Sequence record: MW845759.1
Reading direction: 5' to 3' (one strand)
Length of the DNA stretch: 64,000 nt
Numbering within the stretch: the first letter of the stretch is position 1; every line of letters starts with the position of its first letter. A program made the position numbers and the translations under genes. Below are positions 11,089 to 44,051 of the stretch, piece after piece. The notes below the pieces were generated by a model, which saw nothing but the letters and a program-made list of their open reading frames with translations, did no database searches and was not told the DNA's origin.

Positions 11089-13290
11089 ATGTCTATTGAT
11101 TACGAATCACCTTTCCGTTTAGACAAGGAAGAGTACGACCGCGATATCGACGTTGTCGATGCGTACTTCGAACAAATTAGTCACTACATCGACAACCAAA
11201 CTGGGCATGAGTATGATATTGAAACCATTCGCTTTAACGTCAATGAGATGTTTAAAGATGGTGGTGAGTTAGAACACAAGTTTCCAAACGTTCGCATGTT
11301 CGTTCGTAACCAGAAGACTGGTGACCGCGAAGAGAAGTTCGTTACAATTGATAAACTCTTCAAAACGGTTATTGCGAAAGAACTGATTAGCGCACCATCT
11401 TTAACCTTCTACCTGCCTGAAACCGTCAAACGCTCCAAGCTGTCTGAGTTCATGGAACAGAACGTGGCGAAGCGTGCGGTAATCAAAGGGGAAATGTTTG
11501 CTGCCAAAGCAGCGGGTAACGCGGTACTGCACATCAACAAAAAGAACGAGCAGAACGCCGTTAAGACCCTGAACAACGGTTCGTCCGGTGCATTCAGTTC
11601 ACCGTACACCATTCTGTACAACCAGTCGTCGCACTCGGTACTGACGTCAACCTGCCGTACGGCAACCTCGTTTGCAAACGCAGCCAACGAACGTCTGTTG
11701 GGTGGCCGTCGTCACTACGACACCCCGAACCGTGTTATCGACCACTTCCTGTCAATCGGTACCCTCACTGACTTCCGTGAGTTCGGTCAGATTGTCGAAG
11801 AGTTTAATCTGCACATTCCAACCGTTGATGAAACGATGGAAGTTATCCATTACTCGTCTAACGATTACTGGATTAACCCAGAAGCAGATAAGAAAATCCG
11901 CCAGTACGTTGAGAACACTCCGGGTCTGGAACGTGCGGCATTGGTTTACATGGGTGACCTGTTCCATCTGGCCAAGTTTAACGACGGTATGATGCGTGAC
12001 TTCTTCACAGCACTGATTAGCAAAGCAGTGTTTGAAGAAGAAGTGACCGATTGGGATGCAGCACTGAAGACCATCGACGGCGACATGAAAATTGTTCTGT
12101 CTCAGTTCCGTACGGACGTGGTGCCAGTGGGTAAATCCTTCGGGGACGTGCGCAAGAAAGATGAAAACACCGACAAGTGGCTGCCGTGGGATCAACAAGA
12201 CGAATTCAAACAACTGATTCGCACTGGTTTGTTCCTGCAGAAAACCATCGGTAAGTATTCGAAGTTCATTAAGGTTCTGTTGACCAACAAGAACCTGCCT
12301 GTCAACATTGCACGTATGCCGGATGTGGTACGTAAAGTGGGTGTGGTATCCGATACCGACTCCACGATGATGACAGCACAGTGGTGGGCTACATGGTATA
12401 CGGGAACCTACTTCGGTGAAGAGGCCACTCGTGTGTCCGACATGATTATCTATTTGGCAACGCAGCACATGCGTCACCTTATGGCCAGCATGTCCAAGAA
12501 TATGGGCGTTCACACCGACCGTATCTTCTTGTATGCAGCGAAGAACGAATTCAAATTCGACTCCTTTGCATTGACCACTAAAGCCAAGCACTACTTCTCA
12601 TTAATTACCGCTCAGGAAGGGCAGTTGCTGGAAGACCCAGAGCTGGAAGTAAAAGGTGTGTCCTTACGTACCTCGAACATTCCGCCGGTTGTAATGAATG
12701 AGTTTAAGAAAACCATCAAGCAGTTCTGTAAGACGGTGGCCTCGGGCGAACAGATTGAAATCTTGCCTGTGCTGCACCGCGTTGCAGAAATCGAACACGA
12801 GGTGGCCAGTACCGTTAAAGCCGGTCGGTCAGATTACCTCAAAACCACCAACATCAAAGACCGCAGTGCGTATGCGGACGATGATGAAAAGAACTACCAC
12901 TACCACCGCATGTACAACACCATCTTCGGGCCGAAGTATGGTTACATCGATGAGCCGCCGTACGAAGCTGTACGCCTGCCGGTCAACCTCGAGAACAAAA
13001 CCCAAATCGCTGATTGGTTAGCTTCGATTGAAGACCCTATCATCAAAGCGGGTGCGGAGAAGTGGTTTGAAGAAAACCCGAAACGTAAATACACCACCCT
13101 GATGCTGCCAGACTATCTGGTAAGCAACTACGGGATTCCGGCTGACTTGGTCAAGGCAGCGAACTCACGTCGTACTGCCTTTGCTACCGTGGAGCCGTAC
13201 TATCACGTACTGGAGTGTTTGGGTGTGTTTATGATTGACGAAGATCGTACCCGTCTGTTAAGTGACTACTACGGGGAGATGATCGATTAA
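11089..13290 (+). CDS. Split family-B DNA polymerase, palm/fingers/thumb subunit (phiKZ gp50-like)
   Basis: Motif B-like K-x3-N-x2-S-G (AVKTLNNGSSG), motif C-like VSDTDS, then KHYF and LEVKG; no exonuclease motifs. Confidence 0.9.
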   Translation: MSIDYESPFRLDKEEYDRDIDVVDAYFEQISHYIDNQTGHEYDIETIRFNVNEMFKDGGELEHKFPNVRMFVRNQKTGDREEKFVTIDKLFKTVIAKELISAPSLTFYLPETVKRSKLSEFMEQNVAKRAVIKGEMFAAKAAGNAVLHINKKNEQNAVKTLNNGSSGAFSSPYTILYNQSSHSVLTSTCRTATSFANAANERLLGGRRHYDTPNRVIDHFLSIGTLTDFREFGQIVEEFNLHIPTVDETMEVIHYSSNDYWINPEADKKIRQYVENTPGLERAALVYMGDLFHLAKFNDGMMRDFFTALISKAVFEEEVTDWDAALKTIDGDMKIVLSQFRTDVVPVGKSFGDVRKKDENTDKWLPWDQQDEFKQLIRTGLFLQKTIGKYSKFIKVLLTNKNLPVNIARMPDVVRKVGVVSDTDSTMMTAQWWATWYTGTYFGEEATRVSDMIIYLATQHMRHLMASMSKNMGVHTDRIFLYAAKNEFKFDSFALTTKAKHYFSLITAQEGQLLEDPELEVKGVSLRTSNIPPVVMNEFKKTIKQFCKTVASGEQIEILPVLHRVAEIEHEVASTVKAGRSDYLKTTNIKDRSAYADDDEKNYHYHRMYNTIFGPKYGYIDEPPYEAVRLPVNLENKTQIADWLASIEDPIIKAGAEKWFEENPKRKYTTLMLPDYLVSNYGIPADLVKAANSRRTAFATVEPYYHVLECLGVFMIDEDRTRLLSDYYGEMID

Positions 13291-13298
13291 GGAACAAT

Positions 13299-13649
13299 AT
13301 GGAGAAGTTTTATTTCTGTAAGGAGATAAGTGATGAGGCCCCGGAGTTATCCGGGGTTGCATTCCCAACTCCTGCAATGGCAGTCTACACGTTTCTGCTT
13401 TACGGTCACCCGACCTTTAAGCACATGTGTAAGCTGACCCCACGTCCACCATCGAATGCTTACGTGCTTACGACTGCACGCCCGCATGAAGTGGTGGAGT
13501 TCATGCTCTGTGAAACAGAGACTGTGACTGAGGTTGGAGGTAAGAAGATGTATGGGGATGACAATACCAAAGTTGATGCGAATTGCGGACTGACCGTTCG
13601 CGAGCTGTTGGAGTATCATCGCTTACCTATTTGTATCGAACGACACTAA
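13299..13649 (+). CDS. Hypothetical protein (116 aa)
   Basis: AAGGA SD; follows the polymerase; ends at a terminator. Confidence 0.75.
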   Translation: MEKFYFCKEISDEAPELSGVAFPTPAMAVYTFLLYGHPTFKHMCKLTPRPPSNAYVLTTARPHEVVEFMLCETETVTEVGGKKMYGDDNTKVDANCGLTVRELLEYHRLPICIERH

Positions 13650-13655
13650 TTGACC

Positions 13656-13688
13656 CCCTATCTCGGTTTTCCGGGATAGGGATTTTTT
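13656..13688 (+). terminator. Rho-independent terminator
   Basis: CCCTATCTCGG-TTTT-CCGGGATAGGG followed by a T6 tract. Confidence 0.85.
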
Positions 13689-13765
13689 AGACAAACCCGC
13701 ATCAATCCTCGAAAGTGGTTTTTTGGAGTGATGGTTTTATCTCTTATTATATGCAACTTCCCTTC

Positions 13766-13793
13766 ACGGGGGAGGGGCCTACGGGGGAGGGGG
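13766..13793 (+). repeat. Tandem ACGGGGGAGGGG x2 (15-nt period), G-quadruplex motif
   Basis: G5-A-G4-CCTAC-G5-A-G5 read directly from the sequence. Confidence 0.85.
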
Positions 13794-13930
13794 TAATATG
13801 TATATATATGGGGATAATTAGGTAGTAGTAAATTGATCTATTAATTTAATAAATATTTAGGTTATTAACTTAGTAGATCAGATCCCAAGTAACTAACTAG
13901 ATCGATCTAAAAAACTTAAAAGATAAACCT
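13794..13930. other. AT-rich non-coding tract with clustered GATC sites, candidate unwinding element
   Basis: GATC at 13835, 13876, 13881, 13900 and 13904; GATCTATTAATTT at 13835. Confidence 0.5.
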
Positions 13931-13954
13931 ACCTACCCCAGAAGGGTAGGTAGG
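13911..13954 (-). terminator. Terminator for the minus-strand gene 13959-15020
   Basis: 11-bp stem CCTACCTACCC-CAGAA-GGGTAGGTAGG; A-rich tract on the left reads as a U-tract on the minus strand. Confidence 0.75.
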
Positions 13955-13958
13955 GTAG

Positions 13959-15020
13959 TTATGATCCGATCACTTTATTTAACTTACTAAAGACATTCTG
14001 ATCCAAGGTCAGTCTTACCGAAGGAGGTAGACGTTCAGTGAACCGTAACTGGAAGAAGTTCCTCAGTTCTCTGACGAGTGTCGGGTAGTAACGGGCCATT
14101 ACCGGATTGTCGTATTGCACCACATACGCCATAAAGTTCAGGTTCACCAGTTGGTAGAACCAGCGCTGTTGGTTAGTCTGGGAATACGATTCATCGGCGA
14201 GTAACCCTAACGCACTGCCTTTCCCGTTGAAGTACATCAGGAGGTGGTTCATTACCACACCGGGTAGCGGGTTCCCTTCCTTTAACCGTTGGGCGATAAT
14301 CCGCACATTCCGGTCAACGTGGGGAGAGAGCATCGGGATAGGGTAATCGTTGAACGGGTCATCCTTTTCGATGTCCTGCCCGTTAGCAAAGAAGCGGTGT
14401 CGGTTGAATACCGCCAAGTCCATGTACGTTGGCAGCATTCGATAAACAACATACCGATAAAGATATGTATAGAGGTTAATGCCTCCGTGCTCTTTGTTCC
14501 GCTGGTAGTATTTGTAGGCTTGGAAGTATTGCCAGACAAGTGCTACGATATTGATTTCGATATAGCTGATTCCGCGCCCGCCGTTCTTAGTACCCATCTG
14601 CCAGTTCAGGTTGGTATAGTCGTGGTATAGGTAACGAACCGGCTGCAGTTCTCGCCACGGGGTATTGGGGTCGATTGGTTGAATCGATAAGGCAATCAAC
14701 TCCGCTTGTCCCTGAATAAACTCCCCCACGTGGATTTCACCGGGGTGGCCGGGAGAGACTAAACGCATGGCGTTGCCGATACTGATGAACTTGCGTCGGC
14801 AAGCCCAATAAATGTCGTCGTACTTTGCGTCGGGTGCGAACCCAATGGTGGCAAGTATCTTGGCCAGTAAGTGGTCGGAATCCACACGGGTCTGCATCAT
14901 CTCGACGCGGTTACGAATACGTCTCTGATTATTTTTTACAACAGATGCAATAGTTATGGACGTAGGGTCTACGTTGCGGGACTTTATGATGCTCTGCTGG
15001 ATATCCGCACTACTGAACAT
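13959..15020 (-). CDS. Conserved core protein between the DNA polymerase and chimallin (phiKZ gp52-like position)
   Basis: 353 aa; GAGGAG SD; synteny. Confidence 0.7.
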   Translation of the reverse strand: MFSSADIQQSIIKSRNVDPTSITIASVVKNNQRRIRNRVEMMQTRVDSDHLLAKILATIGFAPDAKYDDIYWACRRKFISIGNAMRLVSPGHPGEIHVGEFIQGQAELIALSIQPIDPNTPWRELQPVRYLYHDYTNLNWQMGTKNGGRGISYIEINIVALVWQYFQAYKYYQRNKEHGGINLYTYLYRYVVYRMLPTYMDLAVFNRHRFFANGQDIEKDDPFNDYPIPMLSPHVDRNVRIIAQRLKEGNPLPGVVMNHLLMYFNGKGSALGLLADESYSQTNQQRWFYQLVNLNFMAYVVQYDNPVMARYYPTLVRELRNFFQLRFTERLPPSVRLTLDQNVFSKLNKVIGS

Positions 15021-15155
15021 GATGATATCTCCTCAAGGGTGGTCATACTATCGCACGGCGACACTCTAAAATTTTACAGATAGATTTTATTCTATTGAAC
15101 CAGAGCGCTTAAAACCGTTCTACATGTTTGGGTAATGTTATTGAAAGATTATTCA

Positions 15156-15225: not shown

Positions 15226-17013
15226 ATGGTAGAATTTCACGACGAAAAGAAAAACGCTAACACTTCCTCTGCAGACAACAACGCTGCAACGGGTAACGTG
15301 TCTGGCTTCTCTGTTGGCACCGCTAACGAGATGAACATGGCCTTTGAGTGGAGCTCTGTAAACTCGCAGGCTGGTAAGTTCGTAGAAGTGATTAAAGAAG
15401 CCGCCAAAGAAAACCAGTATCTGGCGAACTTCCAAGTCGGTACCGTTGATGCGGTAACTGGCGAATTCGGTTCTGCGGCATACGTCGCTGGTGAACTGCG
15501 CGGCATCCCGCTGTTCGGCATCGTGTTCTTCGAGAAGGGTCTGTCCCTGCGTCTGGTGGTAAACAACAATCAGGAAGATTACTACTCCATCGCTTCCCTG
15601 ATTAACAAAGACGTTATCGCCACTGTTGCGAAAACGCTGAAAACTACCCACAGCCTGTCTCAGGACCCGCGCTTCATCAGCATCAACACCATCCCGGATC
15701 TGGACCTGGCTCTGACTCGTGAGCGTGCTCTGTCCATCATGGGTCAGATGATGACCAGCATCTTCGGTCGTGCTTCCGGTATTCTGGGTAAACTCGTCAT
15801 CACCAAAAATGACAAGTTCATCGCTCAGGTCGGCGGCATCGGCGAAGGCGCAGTTCTGGATGTGAACGGTCACGCACAACGTGCTGACTTCGGTATCAAA
15901 CTGTCTCACGTTCCGCTGCAGCAGAACACTACCCCGACTCTGATGTCAGGTACCAATGCTCAGCAGTACCCGAACTGTGCGGCCGCTGGTTACGCTAACC
16001 TGCGCTACACCGGTCTGGTGAAGAACGCAGACGGTAGCATCAAAGACATGCGTCAGATTGCCCCAGAGCTGATTATCAGCCTGATGGACTCTTCTACGCT
16101 GACTGCGAACGCGCCGTTTGAGCGTCAGATTCTGATGCTGGCAGTGGCTGCGAAAACTGCAGCGATGGGTGGCTGGATGGACTTCATCAAGAACTCCCTG
16201 GACGGTAAGACGCGTAAAATCTCTGCACTGGCTCAGAACGTGAACTGGGGCAAAGACGTGTCTAACACCGACTGGAAAGCGATGGACAAATCCGTCGAAG
16301 CAGCTGAGCGCTTCCTGCGTGAGTTCTGCTACGAAACCGCGGGTCTGGTCGTTGAGCACCGTGCAGGTAACGGTATCGGCGGTCTGATTGGTCTGATTGC
16401 AGAAGTTGCACAGAACAAACAGCACGCGCTGGAAACTCTGCTGGCTCTGCTGGACAACATGTTCCCGGTTGTTGAAGGTAACAAGTTCTCCGACGGCCTG
16501 CGTATTGCGTTCGGTGGTCCGACTGTAACACTGTCTGCATCTCACATCGTCTCCGGCGTTGTACCGACCGTGGCAGGTGTGTACCGTGGTTCTAACGGCA
16601 TGCGTTCATACTCCGATATGGACCTGCTGCGTACTACCACTGCGCTGGGTGACGACCGTGCTGAAGTGCTGAAATACTTCCGTGCTCAGTCGTACAAACA
16701 TCGTAACATGCAGCCTAAGCAGCAGCGTATCTACCTGGCTCAGCTGGCTAACAGCCTGTTCTCTGGCAACGATCCGATTCCGACCGGTGAAGGTGTTCAG
16801 ATTTCCATCAACACCACCTTCGCGAAGTTCCTGTACGAAGCGGTTGATGCGTGTGGCCTGCTGCAGCTGACCGGTGTGAACGCAATGTCTGTTGCGGATT
16901 CCGTACCGTTCTACAACAACACTGGCGACCTGTTCGTAATGTCTGGTGTTGGTGGCGTGTCTACCAACAACGCGTTCGACTTCGCTCAGCAGTCTGGCTA
17001 TTTCAACATGTAA
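15226..17013 (+). CDS. chmA: Chimallin, major phage-nucleus shell protein
   Basis: 595 aa; strong high-expression codon bias; directly upstream of the NADFDGD-containing nvRNAP subunit as phiKZ gp54 is of gp55; flexible N- and C-terminal segments. Confidence 0.85.
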   Translation: MVEFHDEKKNANTSSADNNAATGNVSGFSVGTANEMNMAFEWSSVNSQAGKFVEVIKEAAKENQYLANFQVGTVDAVTGEFGSAAYVAGELRGIPLFGIVFFEKGLSLRLVVNNNQEDYYSIASLINKDVIATVAKTLKTTHSLSQDPRFISINTIPDLDLALTRERALSIMGQMMTSIFGRASGILGKLVITKNDKFIAQVGGIGEGAVLDVNGHAQRADFGIKLSHVPLQQNTTPTLMSGTNAQQYPNCAAAGYANLRYTGLVKNADGSIKDMRQIAPELIISLMDSSTLTANAPFERQILMLAVAAKTAAMGGWMDFIKNSLDGKTRKISALAQNVNWGKDVSNTDWKAMDKSVEAAERFLREFCYETAGLVVEHRAGNGIGGLIGLIAEVAQNKQHALETLLALLDNMFPVVEGNKFSDGLRIAFGGPTVTLSASHIVSGVVPTVAGVYRGSNGMRSYSDMDLLRTTTALGDDRAEVLKYFRAQSYKHRNMQPKQQRIYLAQLANSLFSGNDPIPTGEGVQISINTTFAKFLYEAVDACGLLQLTGVNAMSVADSVPFYNNTGDLFVMSGVGGVSTNNAFDFAQQSGYFNM

Positions 17014-42707: not shown

Positions 42708-44051
42708 ATGGGACACTGGTTAAATCTTGCTGGCAGACTCGCGAACCGCCAGCATGTAGCGTCGGAATCTATCAAATTCCAAAACCGCGATAAGTTTGAA
42801 AAGGTTGCTGCAGCCGTTGCCGAATTCCGTCAGAATAACTACAGCCGTACCGCGTACGAAACCTCAACTATTCCAACTGTGATTCTGGAATGCTTTGGGG
42901 TCAACACACGTCTGTGCGATGGCAGTGAACTGGGTCTTGCCGACCAACGCTTAGCCGCCGTTCATCCTCCTGAACTCGACAAGAACCACCCGCTGGTTCC
43001 GGAGTTCCAACGCATTGCGTATAAAGGGAACAACGATTTAACCGTTTATAGCAAATTTGCCAAAGACGGTGTAATTATCGGTGAAGTAAACGACGCGGAA
43101 GCCCGTGTCAGTGGCGATTACAGCAAGGTTATTTGTCAGCTGTACGTCACTCCTCCTCTTTTTGCCGATGAATCGTTTACCAACGAAGAATTGGCAGCGA
43201 TTATCCTGCACGAGGTTGGACACATCTATACCTACTTCAAGCTGATTGGTCGTACGTTGCTGACGAACATGATTGCGGATGCCGCAGCTAACCGCCTCAT
43301 GAAACTCGAAGACCCGAAAGAGAAGATGAAGGTCGTGAGTGACGTGGAGAAGCTGCTCAACACCAAAATCGGTCAGCCGGAAACCCTGCTGGAAGAGTAC
43401 CGTAAAGAGCCGCTGTACATGCACCTCGTGACGGAGCTGTCTCAGCCACGTATCAACGCGGTGGCTTCTAACGGTTACGTGAACCGTAACTGGGAACGTC
43501 TGGCGGATGACTTTGCAGCGCGCTGTGGCGCAGCGCAGTATCTGGCGACCGGGCTGTATAAGCTCGAAACCTCGCCAATGTACATCGCCCGTAACAACTC
43601 CTTTATCGACTTCGGCACTCACATCGTTACGCAAGTGGCGCTGGTTGGTTTCATTATCTGGAATGCCTACTACTCGCCTATCATCGTGGCCGGGTTGTGT
43701 ATTCTGGGGCTGGTGATTACTGACCCGCAAGACTACATCTACGACCAACCGCAAGAGCGCTTTACAACGCTGCGCCGTACTATGGTCGAAGAGCTGCGGG
43801 TGTACGAAGGCGTTAACAGCAAAGAAGCCAACGAATACCGCAAGCGTATCCTGCGCGAAATCGGTGTGGTTGACCAACTGCTGTCGCAGACCACCGATAA
43901 GGCAAACGTCTTTAAACTGTTCCACGACTACCTGACACCGTCGGGCCATCGTGAACGTAAAGCCATCAGCTTCCAGCAAGACCTCGAGACCTTCTTGACG
44001 TCTGACCTGGCTGTCGCCTCTGCCCGTCTGAATCTTGCAGGCGCAAAATAA
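42708..44051 (+). CDS. Virion head protein with an M48-like Zn-metalloprotease motif and hydrophobic helices
   Basis: ILHEVGH (HExxH), downstream ERLADDFA, two hydrophobic segments, N-terminal ASES. Confidence 0.7.
   Translation: MGHWLNLAGRLANRQHVASESIKFQNRDKFEKVAAAVAEFRQNNYSRTAYETSTIPTVILECFGVNTRLCDGSELGLADQRLAAVHPPELDKNHPLVPEFQRIAYKGNNDLTVYSKFAKDGVIIGEVNDAEARVSGDYSKVICQLYVTPPLFADESFTNEELAAIILHEVGHIYTYFKLIGRTLLTNMIADAAANRLMKLEDPKEKMKVVSDVEKLLNTKIGQPETLLEEYRKEPLYMHLVTELSQPRINAVASNGYVNRNWERLADDFAARCGAAQYLATGLYKLETSPMYIARNNSFIDFGTHIVTQVALVGFIIWNAYYSPIIVAGLCILGLVITDPQDYIYDQPQERFTTLRRTMVEELRVYEGVNSKEANEYRKRILREIGVVDQLLSQTTDKANVFKLFHDYLTPSGHRERKAISFQQDLETFLTSDLAVASARLNLAGAK

What the first reader, a model, noticed from the sequence alone, without database searches (positions are those of the whole stretch)
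13650..14003. Candidate replication origin beside the DNA polymerase: G-quadruplex/CSB-II-like repeat, AT-rich unwinding tract and GATC cluster
Seen in the sequence: the largest non-coding gap in this gene-dense window (13650-13958) is bracketed by two opposed terminators. Inside are a 15-nt-period tandem repeat ACGGGGGAGGGG x2 (G5-A-G4-CCTAC-G5-A-G5, a canonical four-tract G-quadruplex pattern), a TATGTATATATATG run and a very AT-rich tract. There are eight GATC sites in about 170 bp (13835, 13876, 13881, 13900, 13904, 13963, 13968, 14000; the last three fall in the end of the adjacent gene), against fewer than one expected at uniform composition. GATCTATTAATTT at 13835 is one mismatch from the E. 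coli oriC left 13-mer GATCTATTTATTT. Established knowledge: Gn-A-Gn tracts (mitochondrial CSB II, the ColE1 RNA II G-stretch) stabilise R-loop primers, and GATC-rich AT 13-mers form the Dam/SeqA-regulated oriC unwinding element. Inference: this may be a transcription-primed origin. I know of no mapped origin for this phage family. Alternatives are a packaging site or a DNA anchor on the nucleus shell.
Basis: partly seen in the sequence, partly recalled or inferred. Interest (0 to 1): 0.82.

Follow-up and report, generated by a model that had tools for sequence, protein, structure and literature searches.

The report
Orphan promoter with G-rich non-coding leader
The gap beside the DNA polymerase of this nucleus-forming jumbo phage holds a conserved phage-type promoter that appears to launch a structured non-coding RNA; the RNA runs through the genome's only G-quadruplex motif, its most AT-rich stretch and its only GATC cluster, so it is a real and unusual element, but whether it starts DNA replication is still open.

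Summary
The window is Erwinia phage pEa_SNUABM_38 (Derbicusvirus, a nucleus-forming jumbo phage). The 309-bp gap holds the genome's only four-tract G-quadruplex motif, its lowest-GC 150 bp and its only GATC cluster.

New finding: the gap is a transcription unit. CTTATTATATG (13743-13753) matches the TATG(+1) promoter of the phiKZ non-virion RNA polymerase. In about 15 sequence variants from several related genera the same promoter sits at this spot. It is followed by a hairpin that begins at the G of TATG. That hairpin shows compensatory changes, forms G-U pairs only on the + strand, and often carries GNRA or UNCG loops. A GGGGGAG-type purine tract follows.

The second G-tract pair, the AT-rich block and the GATC cluster are confined to Derbicusvirus. 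The GATC positions are not kept in Phobos. The promoter-to-3'-hairpin distance stays at 202-205 nt.

Best reading (0.4): a stable non-coding RNA aimed at the convergent gp52-like gene. The Dam/SeqA/oriC analogy is weak, and GC skew is uninformative. No experiment exists.

The parts
13656..13688 (+). Intrinsic terminator of the 116-aa gene (CCCTATCTCGG-TTTT-CCGGGATAGGG plus T-run)
   Evidence: 97% identical to CR5 and 89% to Phobos
13691..13742 (+). Spacer upstream of the promoter, ending in GGTTTTATCTC. It corresponds to the 'hairpin-TTTTAT' that precedes the promoter in Phobos and in the other genera.
13743..13753 (+). CTTATTATATG: predicted phage non-virion RNA polymerase promoter. TATG is 13750-13753 and the predicted start is G13753.
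   Evidence: Invariant in 5 Derbicusvirus phages. (C)CCTATTATATG or TATAnnTATG occupies the same place in about 15 variants from relatives. phiKZ consensus T(-3)ATG(+1) comes from PMC7598289 and PMC12809450. TATG is enriched 22-35 nt upstream of start codons in this genome.
13753..13794 (+). 5' hairpin flush with the predicted start: pyrimidine arm CTTCCCTTC (13757-13765) pairs with the G-tracts
   Evidence: Folds. Phobos changes (C to U, U to C) keep pairing to G. The + strand folds at -17 kcal/mol and the - strand at -6.5.
13766..13793 (+). ACGGGGGAGGGG x2 (period 15), the only canonical four-tract G4 motif in the genome. The second copy (13783-13793) corresponds to the GGGGGAG(A/G)G purine tract conserved in the other genera.
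13797..13810 (+). TATGTATATATATG: two further TATG motifs with G at 13800 and 13810. The ATG at 13798 sits 7 nt after GGAGG and opens a 7-codon mini-ORF (13798-13821) that is not conserved (12 codons in CR5, 3 in Phobos).
13811..13927 (+). AT-rich block, specific to Derbicusvirus. Together with 13794-13810 it forms the lowest-GC 150 bp of the genome.
   Evidence: 88% identical to CR5 but 55% to Phobos, which is the neutral level. Absent in other genera.
13833..13881 (+). Long imperfect hairpin whose base is GATC(13835) paired with GATC(13876). Phobos has a different-sequence hairpin (TTACCTAGTAA-ATAG-TTACTAGGTAA) at the same distance from the start, about +104.
   Evidence: (I1)
13867..13924 (+). 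Three copies of AACTnAnnAGAT at 24- and 22-bp spacing, plus the perfect palindrome TAGATCGATCTA (13898-13909). Four of the genome's 12 TAGATC/GATCTA hexamers lie in 13835-13909.
   Evidence: (D1). The spacing changes by a 4-bp deletion in Derbicus and EarlPhillipIV.
13928..13954 (-). Terminator of the 353-aa gene (11-bp stem, T-run on the - side only). On the + strand it is a strong hairpin without a U-run. It ends the 202-nt unit.
   Evidence: Unit length is 202/203/203/205/202 nt in five phages.
13959..15020 (-). Convergent 353-aa gene, homolog of phiKZ gp052 ('structural head protein'), with its own TATG 24 nt upstream of the ATG. Its last codons carry GATC 13963, 13968 and 14000.

Best explanation
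The gap is a small stand-alone transcription unit read by the phage's own non-virion RNA polymerase. Its product is a stable non-coding RNA rather than a protein or a host-type origin.

Proposed steps:
1. Transcription starts at G13753 of CTTATTATATG.
2. The RNA begins with a hairpin flush with its 5' end, followed by a Shine-Dalgarno-like purine tract. Both are classic 5' stabilisers.
3. In Derbicusvirus the RNA continues through about 115 nt of AU-rich sequence with one long hairpin, then reaches the strong 13928-13954 hairpin, 202 nt from the start.
4. That hairpin has no U-run on the + side, so some RNA probably reads on, antisense to the gp52-like head-protein gene.

The promoter points into the 3' end of that gene in every genus examined. 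I therefore take convergent/antisense action on that gene as the most likely role.

Status of each step:
- Shown: the sequence features, their conservation, hairpin covariation and strand asymmetry.
- Inferred: promoter identity (extrapolated from phiKZ), the start site, the RNA 3' end and the function.
For: - No conserved ORF, tRNA or Rfam family in the gap.
- The core 13743-13810 is 100% identical to CR5 and 93% to Phobos, against 52-71% at third codon positions.
- The module 'terminator - (C)CCTATTATATG - hairpin - GGGGGAG(A/G)G - stop of the gp52-like gene' recurs in about 15 variants from Wellington-, Machina-, Seoul- and phiEaH2/Asesino-type phages, whose neighbouring protein is only 41-46% identical.
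- The hairpin starts at the G of TATG in all 15 variants. It is more stable on the + strand in 15 of 15, with a mean difference of 6.3 kcal/mol.
- In a loop-centred alignment, 64 of 64 cells pair and 7 of 8 pairs show changes on both sides. Slid controls give 33-61% pairing. There are 11 G-U cells. Loops are GAAA, UACG or UAAC.
- TATG(+1) is the phiKZ nvRNAP promoter. In this genome TATG sits 22-35 nt upstream of many start codons, right after terminator T-runs, at 1.9 times the background density.
- A second exact CTATTATATGCAAC precedes a gene at 153.8 kb, and its TATG is kept in CR5 and Phobos.
- Unit length is 202-205 nt in five phages, although the middle of the Phobos unit has diverged to the neutral level.
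- A 5' hairpin plus an SD-like tract makes sense for an RNA that must survive in the cytoplasm, not for a primer used inside the phage nucleus (inference).
Against: - No transcript data exist for any phage of this clade.
- Promoter specificity is extrapolated from phiKZ.
- At the phiKZ gp051/gp052 junction there is only a bidirectional terminator. 3' ends map at 43796/43799 and no start site is recorded.
- The + side of the 13928-13954 hairpin lacks a U-run, so a discrete 202-nt RNA is not predicted by the canonical rule.
- No complementarity of 14 nt or more to other parts of the phage genome.
- This reading does not explain why the genome's only G4 motif, its lowest-GC stretch and its only GATC cluster coincide here.
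- It also does not explain why a Derbicus-specific AT-rich block and a separate - terminator were placed between the promoter and the supposed antisense target.
Confidence: 0.4

Rival explanations
1. Transcription-primed (R-loop) replication origin, as the reader proposed but with phage rather than host factors. The nvRNAP starts at G13753. The G-rich RNA, over a C-rich template and with the non-template strand able to form a G4, forms a persistent hybrid. The adjoining AT-rich block melts, and the RNA 3' end primes the phage family-B polymerase, as at the T7 primary origin, T4 oriF/oriG, ColE1 or mitochondrial CSB II.
For: - Promoter, G-tracts and AT-rich block lie in the right order on the right strand.
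- The site holds the only G4 motif in the genome, its lowest-GC 150 bp and its only GATC cluster, all within 200 bp of each other and next to the DNA polymerase gene.
- In Phobos the AT-rich block has diverged to the neutral level but keeps its low GC (28-30%) and its length. That pattern is expected for an unwinding element defined by composition.
- The phage nucleus excludes most host proteins, so initiation by a phage RNA polymerase is plausible a priori.
- No origin is described for jumbo phages in a 2026 review.
Against: - Outside Derbicusvirus the same promoter module has a single purine tract and no AT-rich DNA downstream (GC percentile 0.1-0.6). phiKZ, Goslar and pVa-21 lack the module altogether.
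- GC and AT skew follow gene orientation, with no inflection here.
- The RNA-level 5' hairpin with tetraloops and the SD-like tract look like cytoplasmic stabilisers.
- GATC positions turn over in Phobos.
- The repeat spacing is not kept in Derbicus.
- There are no replication data.
Confidence: 0.3
2. A DNA-level protein-binding site, such as a packaging (pac) site, a partition or shell anchor, or an operator. It would be built from the TAGATC half-sites and palindromes and would merely sit next to an unrelated promoter.
For: - Four of the genome's 12 TAGATC/GATCTA hexamers lie in 75 bp, including the perfect 12-bp palindrome TAGATCGATCTA.
- Rare palindromic tetramers cluster in the Phobos gap too, with 3 GATC and 4 CTAG.
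- The block is 88% identical to CR5, above the neutral level.
- The P1 pac site is a known GATC-rich phage site (general knowledge).
Against: - The hexamers do not match the P1 TGATC(A/G) elements.
- The sites are not conserved in Phobos or in other genera.
- No terminase or DNA-binding gene is adjacent.
- The element lies 13.8 kb from the start of all deposited records, which is uninformative.
- Part of the GATC count comes from the base of an RNA-compatible hairpin.
Confidence: 0.1
3. The promoter is an extra late promoter for the chimallin/RNA-polymerase operon downstream. It would read antisense through the gp52-like gene, and the Derbicus-specific AT-rich block would be a tolerated leftover, such as a decayed small gene from a region where relatives carry 3-4 small genes.
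For: - Terminator-then-promoter is the usual operon boundary in this genome.
- The next + strand genes are chimallin and an RNA polymerase beta subunit.
- Relatives carry variable small genes between the polymerase and the gp52-like gene.
Against: - Chimallin has its own early-class promoter at 15074.
- A 1.3-kb antisense leader is unusual.
- The AT-rich block is 88% identical to CR5, and its length is kept to within 3 nt even in Phobos. That argues against junk.
- No frame in the block is open.
Confidence: 0.1
4. A host-type oriC-like origin that works through DnaA, Dam methylation and SeqA on GATC-containing 13-mers.
For: One 13-mer lies 1 mismatch from the oriC L 13-mer, two more lie at 2 mismatches, and there is a GATC cluster.
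Against: - No TTATNCACA box lies in the gap. The nearest look-alike, TTATCCCCA (reverse complement of 13809-13817), is not kept in CR5.
- The 13-mer-like sites are in mixed orientation, 56-77 bp apart, and one is coding.
- They are absent in Phobos.
- phiKZ-type phages replicate in a compartment that excludes most host proteins and do not depend on host transcription.
Confidence: 0.02

Closest known systems
phiKZ late promoters for the non-virion RNA polymerase (for example p119L)
   Same: TATG with the start at the G. Placement directly after terminators. The sequence downstream of the start matters.
   Different: Here 8-12 nt upstream of TATG are also conserved (CCCTATTA). The transcript has no ORF. 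A hairpin begins at +1. No start site has been mapped in this clade, and phiKZ has no start site at the homologous junction.
T7 primary origin (phi1.1A/1.1B promoters plus an AT-rich region) and T4 oriF/oriG (promoter plus downstream unwinding element, R-loop primer)
   Same: Phage-polymerase promoter(s), possibly three TATG motifs, are followed by the most AT-rich DNA of the genome. The phage has its own family-B polymerase.
   Different: No evidence of replication starting here. The AT-rich block is genus-specific. The T7 and T4 origin transcripts are also mRNAs, whereas this one is non-coding.
Mitochondrial CSB II and the ColE1 RNA II G-stretch
   Same: A Gn-A-Gn tract lies on the RNA-like strand a few tens of nt downstream of a promoter. 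A structured 5' RNA is present.
   Different: The four-tract arrangement is not conserved beyond the genus. In relatives the tract reads GGAGAGAG or GGGGAAAG, which looks more like a Shine-Dalgarno sequence than a G4. No RNase H or primer-processing evidence.
E. coli oriC unwinding element (GATC-containing 13-mers; Dam/SeqA)
   Same: AT-rich DNA with clustered GATC, and one 13-mer at 1 mismatch.
   Different: No DnaA boxes. The 13-mers are not tandem or direct. Host factors are probably excluded from the phage nucleus. The GATC sites are not conserved in Phobos.
5' mRNA stabilisers (5'-terminal stem-loops such as ompA hp1; STAB-SD of cryIIIA) and cis-antisense RNAs of convergent phage genes
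   Same: A hairpin flush with the 5' end plus an SD-like purine tract without a conserved start codon. The promoter is aimed into the 3' end of a convergent gene.
   Different: RNA stability and antisense effect are untested. In Derbicusvirus the target mRNA ends before the AT-rich block, so the overlap depends on read-through.
Phage P1 pac site
   Same: A cluster of GATC-containing hexamers within about 160 bp of phage DNA in a Dam+ enterobacterial host.
   Different: The hexamers are not TGATC(A/G). There are not two opposed arrays around a cleavage site. The element is not in or near a terminase gene.

Membership tests
phiKZ-type nvRNAP (late) promoter | 5'-TATG-3' on the non-template strand with transcription starting at the G | tested here: inconclusive
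   TATG at 13750-13753 is invariant in 5 Derbicusvirus phages and in all relatives. The hairpin begins at that G in 15 of 15 variants. The start site itself is not mapped.
phiKZ-type nvRNAP (late) promoter | The same motif is used upstream of late genes in the same genome | tested here: met
   TATG lies 22-35 nt upstream of many start codons, after terminator T-runs. Density is 4.6 per kb against 2.4 per kb in the genome.
Transcription-primed origin (T7 primary, T4 oriF/G, ColE1, mtDNA OH) | A promoter directed into the origin region | tested here: met
   Predicted promoter at 13743-13753 on the + strand. This is an inference from sequence, not from RNA data.
Transcription-primed origin (T7 primary, T4 oriF/G, ColE1, mtDNA OH) | G-rich RNA-like strand and/or an easily melted AT-rich element downstream of the promoter | tested here: met
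   G4 motif at 13768-13793 on the + strand. Lowest-GC window at 13794-13943. This holds only in Derbicusvirus and not in other genera.
Transcription-primed origin (T7 primary, T4 oriF/G, ColE1, mtDNA OH) | RNA-to-DNA transition or replication start mapped at the site | not testable with these tools
   Needs nascent-strand or marker-frequency data.
Transcription-primed origin (T7 primary, T4 oriF/G, ColE1, mtDNA OH) | Strand-compositional switch at the site (supportive, not required) | tested here: not met
   Cumulative GC and AT skew follow gene orientation, with no inflection at 13.8 kb.
oriC-type origin (DnaA/Dam/SeqA) | A cluster of DnaA boxes TTATNCACA | tested here: not met
   There are 7 matches in the genome and none near 13.8 kb.
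oriC-type origin (DnaA/Dam/SeqA) | Three tandem direct 13-mers GATCTnTTnTTTT | tested here: not met
   No exact match to the consensus in the genome. There is one site at 1 mismatch and two at 2 mismatches. They are in mixed orientation, 56-77 bp apart, and one is coding.
oriC-type origin (DnaA/Dam/SeqA) | A GATC cluster conserved in relatives | tested here: inconclusive
   The cluster is unique in the genome. It is kept in CR5, Derbicus and EarlPhillipIV. In Phobos it is replaced by other GATC and CTAG sites.
Iteron-type origin | Three or more direct repeats in helical phase, next to a Rep gene | tested here: not met
   Three 12-nt repeats at 24 and 22 bp. The spacing is altered by a 4-bp deletion in Derbicus. 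The repeats are absent in Phobos. No Rep-like neighbour.
Canonical intramolecular G-quadruplex motif | Four G>=3 tracts with loops of 1-7 nt | tested here: met
   G5-A-G4-CCTAC-G5-A-G5. It competes with a -17 kcal/mol hairpin. Folding as a G4 was not tested. The motif is not conserved outside the genus.
P1-type pac site | Two arrays of TGATC(A/G) flanking a cleavage site, in or near the terminase gene | tested here: not met
   The hexamers are TGATCT, AGATCA, AGATCC, AGATCG and CGATCT. The neighbours are the polymerase and a head-protein gene.
Any Rfam RNA family | Covariance-model score at or above the gathering threshold | tested here: not met
   The best hit is NsiR1 at 25.9 bits against a threshold of 39, and it lies on the terminator. 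Nothing else comes close.

The most novel reading that the evidence does not exclude
This is the first identifiable replication origin of a nucleus-forming jumbo phage. A dedicated non-virion-RNA-polymerase promoter would make a G-rich, hairpin-capped RNA that forms an R-loop (helped by the G4) at the edge of the genome's most meltable DNA and primes the phage polymerase. The simpler promoter-hairpin-purine module of related genera would be the ancestral form.
Probability: 0.3. Interest if true: 0.85.

Novelty: new variant of a known kind. Interest (0 to 1): 0.62.

Why it matters
No replication origin has been mapped in Chimalliviridae, and very few non-coding RNAs are known there. How replication starts inside a protein-shelled nucleus that excludes host factors is an open question.

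This element gives a precise target of about 200 bp, with single-nucleotide predictions for the start site at G13753, the hairpin pairs, the G-tracts and the TAGATC sites. These can be tested by RNA end-mapping, marker-frequency sequencing and Cas13-selected mutants.

Even if it is 'only' an RNA gene, it would define an extended promoter class (CCCTATTATATG) for the jumbo-phage RNA polymerase, whose promoter specificity beyond TATG is unexplained. It would also be a conserved orphan transcript shared by Erwinia, Salmonella, Cronobacter and related phages.

Tried and rejected
- Coding potential: only 20-36-aa ORFs, with start codons not conserved. The SD-plus-ATG mini-ORF is 7, 12 or 3 codons in different phages. 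Rejected.
- tRNA or known RNA family: none.
- Sigma-70 promoter: TTGGAG-N16-TATTAT scores 8 of 12, below the scan threshold. Its -35 is not conserved, and phiKZ-type phages do not use host RNAP. Rejected.
- Early-class promoter: the consensus TTTCAGATATAT(A/G)TTAC-N4-RTG was found by k-mer analysis. No match with 4 or fewer mismatches lies in the gap. My first reading of ATATATGTTA sites as TATG promoters was wrong. They belong to this early class.
- GC skew as an origin test: uninformative because it follows gene orientation.
- Homologs of the G-tract repeat: 30 IMG/VR hits to GGGGGAGGGGN5GGGGGAGGGG, of which only Derbicus, CR5 and Phobos are related. BLAST of the gap finds only those five phages. 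Two metagenome scans added no new variants.
- Trans-target search within the phage genome: no complementarity of 14 nt or more.
- Phage-encoded Dam: a crude (D/N/S)PP(Y/F/W) scan plus Pfam on the one candidate found nothing. This is not a full proteome search.
- phiKZ start-site tables: no start site at the homologous junction, only 3' ends.
- Other large 'gaps' as better origin candidates: the 860-bp gap at 136.5-137.4 kb contains unannotated repeat ORFs, and the genome-end regions have no repeats.
- Type III antitoxin-like (ToxI) repeats: considered for the AACTnAnnAGAT repeats, but there is no Rfam hit.
Full report
IDENTITY AND CONTEXT

The window is identical to positions 1-64000 of Erwinia phage pEa_SNUABM_38 (MW845759.1, 224,179 bp, genus Derbicusvirus). 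The finding sits between two gene blocks. On the left are a divergent family-B DNA polymerase (11089-13290, PF20286, E = 2e-297) and a 116-aa gene (13299-13649). On the right are a convergent 353-aa gene (13959-15020, - strand, phrog_3938), a chimallin-like nuclear-shell protein (15226-17013) and an RNA-polymerase beta subunit. The 353-aa protein is the homolog of phiKZ gp052, annotated 'structural head protein'. The order polymerase - small genes - gp52(-) - shell protein is kept in phiKZ, Goslar and pVa-21.

- Both terminators are found by the scan: 13656-13681 on the + strand and 13954-13928 on the - strand.
- ACGGGGGAGGGG occurs twice with period 15.
- All eight GATC positions are exact.
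- GATC is four-fold depleted in this genome (215 observed, 875 expected) and CTAG twelve-fold.
- The only place in 224 kb with four or more GATC in 200 bp is this one, with eight.
- Intergenic DNA elsewhere has 0.67 GATC per kb, against 16 per kb in the gap.
- The G-tract repeat is the only canonical four-tract G-quadruplex motif on the + strand of the genome and the only one with G>=4 tracts on either strand.
- 13794-13943 is the lowest-GC 150-bp window of the genome, at 26%.

Three genome-wide extremes thus fall within 200 bp. Three of the eight GATC sites are in the last codons of the 353-aa gene and are conserved as protein.

CONSERVATION

Only five distinct phages carry a homologous gap: pEa_SNUABM_38, Derbicus, EarlPhillipIV, CR5 and Phobos.

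| Segment | Identity to CR5 | Identity to Phobos |
|---|---|---|
| Core 13743-13810 | 100% | 93% |
| AT-rich block 13811-13927 | 88% | 55% |
| Third codon positions of flanking genes | 62-71% | 52-59% |

The core is under strong constraint. The AT-rich/GATC block is constrained within the CR5-Derbicus clade but has turned over completely in Phobos. Even so, Phobos keeps several properties:
- low GC;
- a different-sequence hairpin at the same distance from the core;
- a cluster of rare palindromic tetramers, with 3 GATC and 4 CTAG;
- the same overall length, with 202-205 nt from the core G to the end of the 3' hairpin in all five phages.

WHAT THE CORE IS

I fetched the 3' flank of the gp52-like gene from 21 IMG/VR and 13 metagenome loci. 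This showed that the core is not peculiar to Derbicusvirus. In Wellington-, Machina-, Seoul- (SPN3US-like) and phiEaH2/Asesino-type phages the neighbouring protein is only 41-46% identical. Yet their short 80-90-bp gap reads: bidirectional terminator - TT(T/A)T..(C)CCTATTATATG - a 7-9-bp hairpin - (A/C)GGGGGAG(A/G)G-like purine tract - stop codon of the gp52-like gene.

The hairpin differs in sequence between lineages but always pairs.
- It begins at the G of TATG in all 15 distinct variants.
- It is more stable on the + strand in 15 of 15, with a mean difference of 6.3 kcal/mol, because G-U pairs would become A-C mismatches on the other strand.
- In a loop-centred alignment of eight variants, 64 of 64 cells pair and 7 of 8 pairs show changes on both sides. 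Sliding the partner by 1-3 columns drops pairing to 33-61%. I built that alignment around the loop, so it leans towards the structure. The strand asymmetry and the slid controls do not depend on that choice.
- The loops are often GAAA, UACG or UAAC, which are typical RNA tetraloops.

This is good evidence for a + strand RNA whose 5' end is at or next to that G.

PROMOTER ASSIGNMENT

The promoter of the phiKZ non-virion RNA polymerase is 5'-TATG-3', with transcription starting at the G. [quoted passage not shown]

In this genome TATG lies 22-35 nt upstream of many start codons, immediately after terminator T-runs. One such TATG precedes the gp52-like gene itself. Its density is 1.9 times background.

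A second exact CTATTATATGCAAC lies at 153,831 (- strand) upstream of a small YdgH/BhsA-like gene. Its TATG is kept in CR5 and Phobos.

A separate early class, TTTCAGATATAT(A/G)TTAC-N4-RTG, resembles the phiKZ early consensus. It has no match in the gap, and one copy lies upstream of chimallin at 15074.

I therefore read CTTATTATATG (13743-13753) as a phage late-type promoter with a start at G13753. This is an inference, since no start site has been mapped in this clade. In phiKZ the homologous junction is only a bidirectional terminator, with 3' ends at 43796/43799 and no start site.

RE-READING THE G-TRACTS

In Derbicusvirus the 5' hairpin is formed by CTTCCCTTC (13757-13765) pairing with the G-tracts. 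It folds at -17 kcal/mol on the + strand and -6.5 on the - strand. The two differences in Phobos, C to U and U to C, keep pairing to G. The second ACGGGGGAGGGGG copy corresponds to the purine tract of the other genera. The 'tandem repeat' is thus the 3' arm of the 5' hairpin plus the conserved purine tract.

The four-tract G4 is real, but it is a genus-specific by-product or elaboration. Relatives have GGAGAGAG, GGGGAAAG or GGGAGAGGG, which resemble a Shine-Dalgarno sequence more than a G4. No conserved start codon or ORF follows. The well-spaced ATG at 13798 opens 7, 12 or 3 codons in different phages.

WHAT THE TRANSCRIPT DOES

The data do not settle this. A 5'-flush hairpin plus an SD-like tract are classic stabilisers of cytoplasmic RNAs. 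The one constant across genera is that the promoter fires into the 3' end of the gp52-like gene. For these reasons I rank 'stable non-coding or antisense RNA' first, at 0.4.

The weak points of that reading are these. It does not explain the coincidence of G4, lowest GC and GATC cluster. It does not explain the conserved 202-nt length. It does not explain why Derbicusvirus put an AT-rich block and a separate - terminator between the promoter and the target. The + side of the 13928-13954 hairpin has no U-run. No trans target exists within the phage genome.

THE ORIGIN HYPOTHESIS

Strengthened: there is now a specific, conserved promoter on the correct strand, so the RNA is G-rich over a C-rich template and runs straight into the most meltable DNA of the genome. 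That is the geometry of the T7 primary origin, T4 oriF/oriG, ColE1 RNA II and mitochondrial CSB II (general knowledge). Turnover of sequence in Phobos, with AT-richness and length retained, is what one expects of an unwinding element.

Weakened:
- The AT-rich block, the G4 and the GATC cluster are genus-specific. DNA downstream of the module in other genera is not AT-rich.
- phiKZ, Goslar and pVa-21 lack the module altogether.
- GC skew is uninformative.
- The Dam/SeqA/oriC analogy is poor. There are no DnaA boxes. The 13-mer-like sites are scattered and in mixed orientation. The GATC positions are not kept in Phobos. No Dam-like gene was found in a crude scan. Host proteins are largely excluded from the phage nucleus.

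I give the phage-factor version of the origin hypothesis 0.3 and the host oriC-like version 0.02.

A DNA-level protein-binding site is a further possibility, at 0.1. Four of the genome's 12 TAGATC/GATCTA hexamers lie here, including the palindrome TAGATCGATCTA. The site does not match the P1 pac architecture.

VERDICT

The decisive experiments are RNA end-mapping and early-infection marker-frequency or nascent-strand sequencing, followed by promoter, hairpin, G-tract and AT-block mutants.

Noticed in passing
window 13299-13649: The 116-aa gene just upstream of the gap is only 65% identical in DNA to Derbicus, while its flanks are 96-98% identical. It is 59% identical to CR5 and 55% to Phobos. 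This is a hypervariable or swapped small gene next to the element (phrog_26882, function unknown). Relatives carry 3-4 different small genes at this position.
   Followed up: partly
genome 153,348-153,868 (outside the window; L012 3348-3868, - strand): A second exact CTATTATATGCAAC is followed by a non-coding leader of about 280 nt that is strongly conserved in CR5 and Phobos. The leader includes ACCCCCTAC...TAGGGGG and an invariant TTCGGCCGATAAATGATTCG. It lies upstream of a 68-aa YdgH/BhsA/McbA-like protein gene (PF07338, E = 5e-13). It is a candidate structured leader or second non-coding RNA.
   Followed up: partly
window 15074, 23080, 28337, 55793, 63240; 5234 (-); more elsewhere in the genome: A promoter class TTT(C/A)(A/G)GATATAT(A/G)TTA(C/T)-N4-(A/G)TG resembles the phiKZ early (virion RNA polymerase) consensus TATATTAC. 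One copy sits 150 nt upstream of the chimallin start codon.
   Followed up: partly
window 5177, 14932, 62185; genome 85609, 223374, 223324 (-): TTTTTTACAAC(A) recurs six times, mostly 50-290 nt upstream of genes. One copy lies inside the 5' end of the gp52-like gene and points towards chimallin. It may be another promoter class, perhaps the middle class.
   Followed up: no
whole genome: GATC occurs at 0.25 and CTAG at 0.08 of expectation, while most other 4-bp palindromes are near expectation. CTAG is less depleted in intergenic DNA (1.06 per kb) than in coding DNA (0.28 per kb), but GATC is equally depleted in both.
   Followed up: partly
genome 136,524-137,383 (outside the window; L011 36524-37383): The largest annotated 'gap' of the genome (860 bp) contains two unannotated - strand ORFs (132 and 128 aa) built of 12-nt periodic CCnGAACAn repeats, which would encode Pro/Glu/Gln-rich tandem repeats.
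   Followed up: partly
L067 13770-13801 (phiKZ 43769-43800): At the phiKZ gp051/gp052 junction the bidirectional terminator CCCCCTCC-aattta-GGAGGGGG is flanked by TTTATG on one strand and TTATATG on the other. Terminator tails and TATG promoter motifs therefore overlap in phiKZ. Its 3' arm has the same GGAGGGGG character as the purine tract studied here.
   Followed up: partly
L012 4860-4885 (genome about 154,860-154,885): Another purine run, CTGGGGAGAGGGGGC, lies in the 300-bp divergent intergenic region that also carries an early-class promoter (154,971). It is not preceded by TATG, and any relation to the element is unknown.
   Followed up: no
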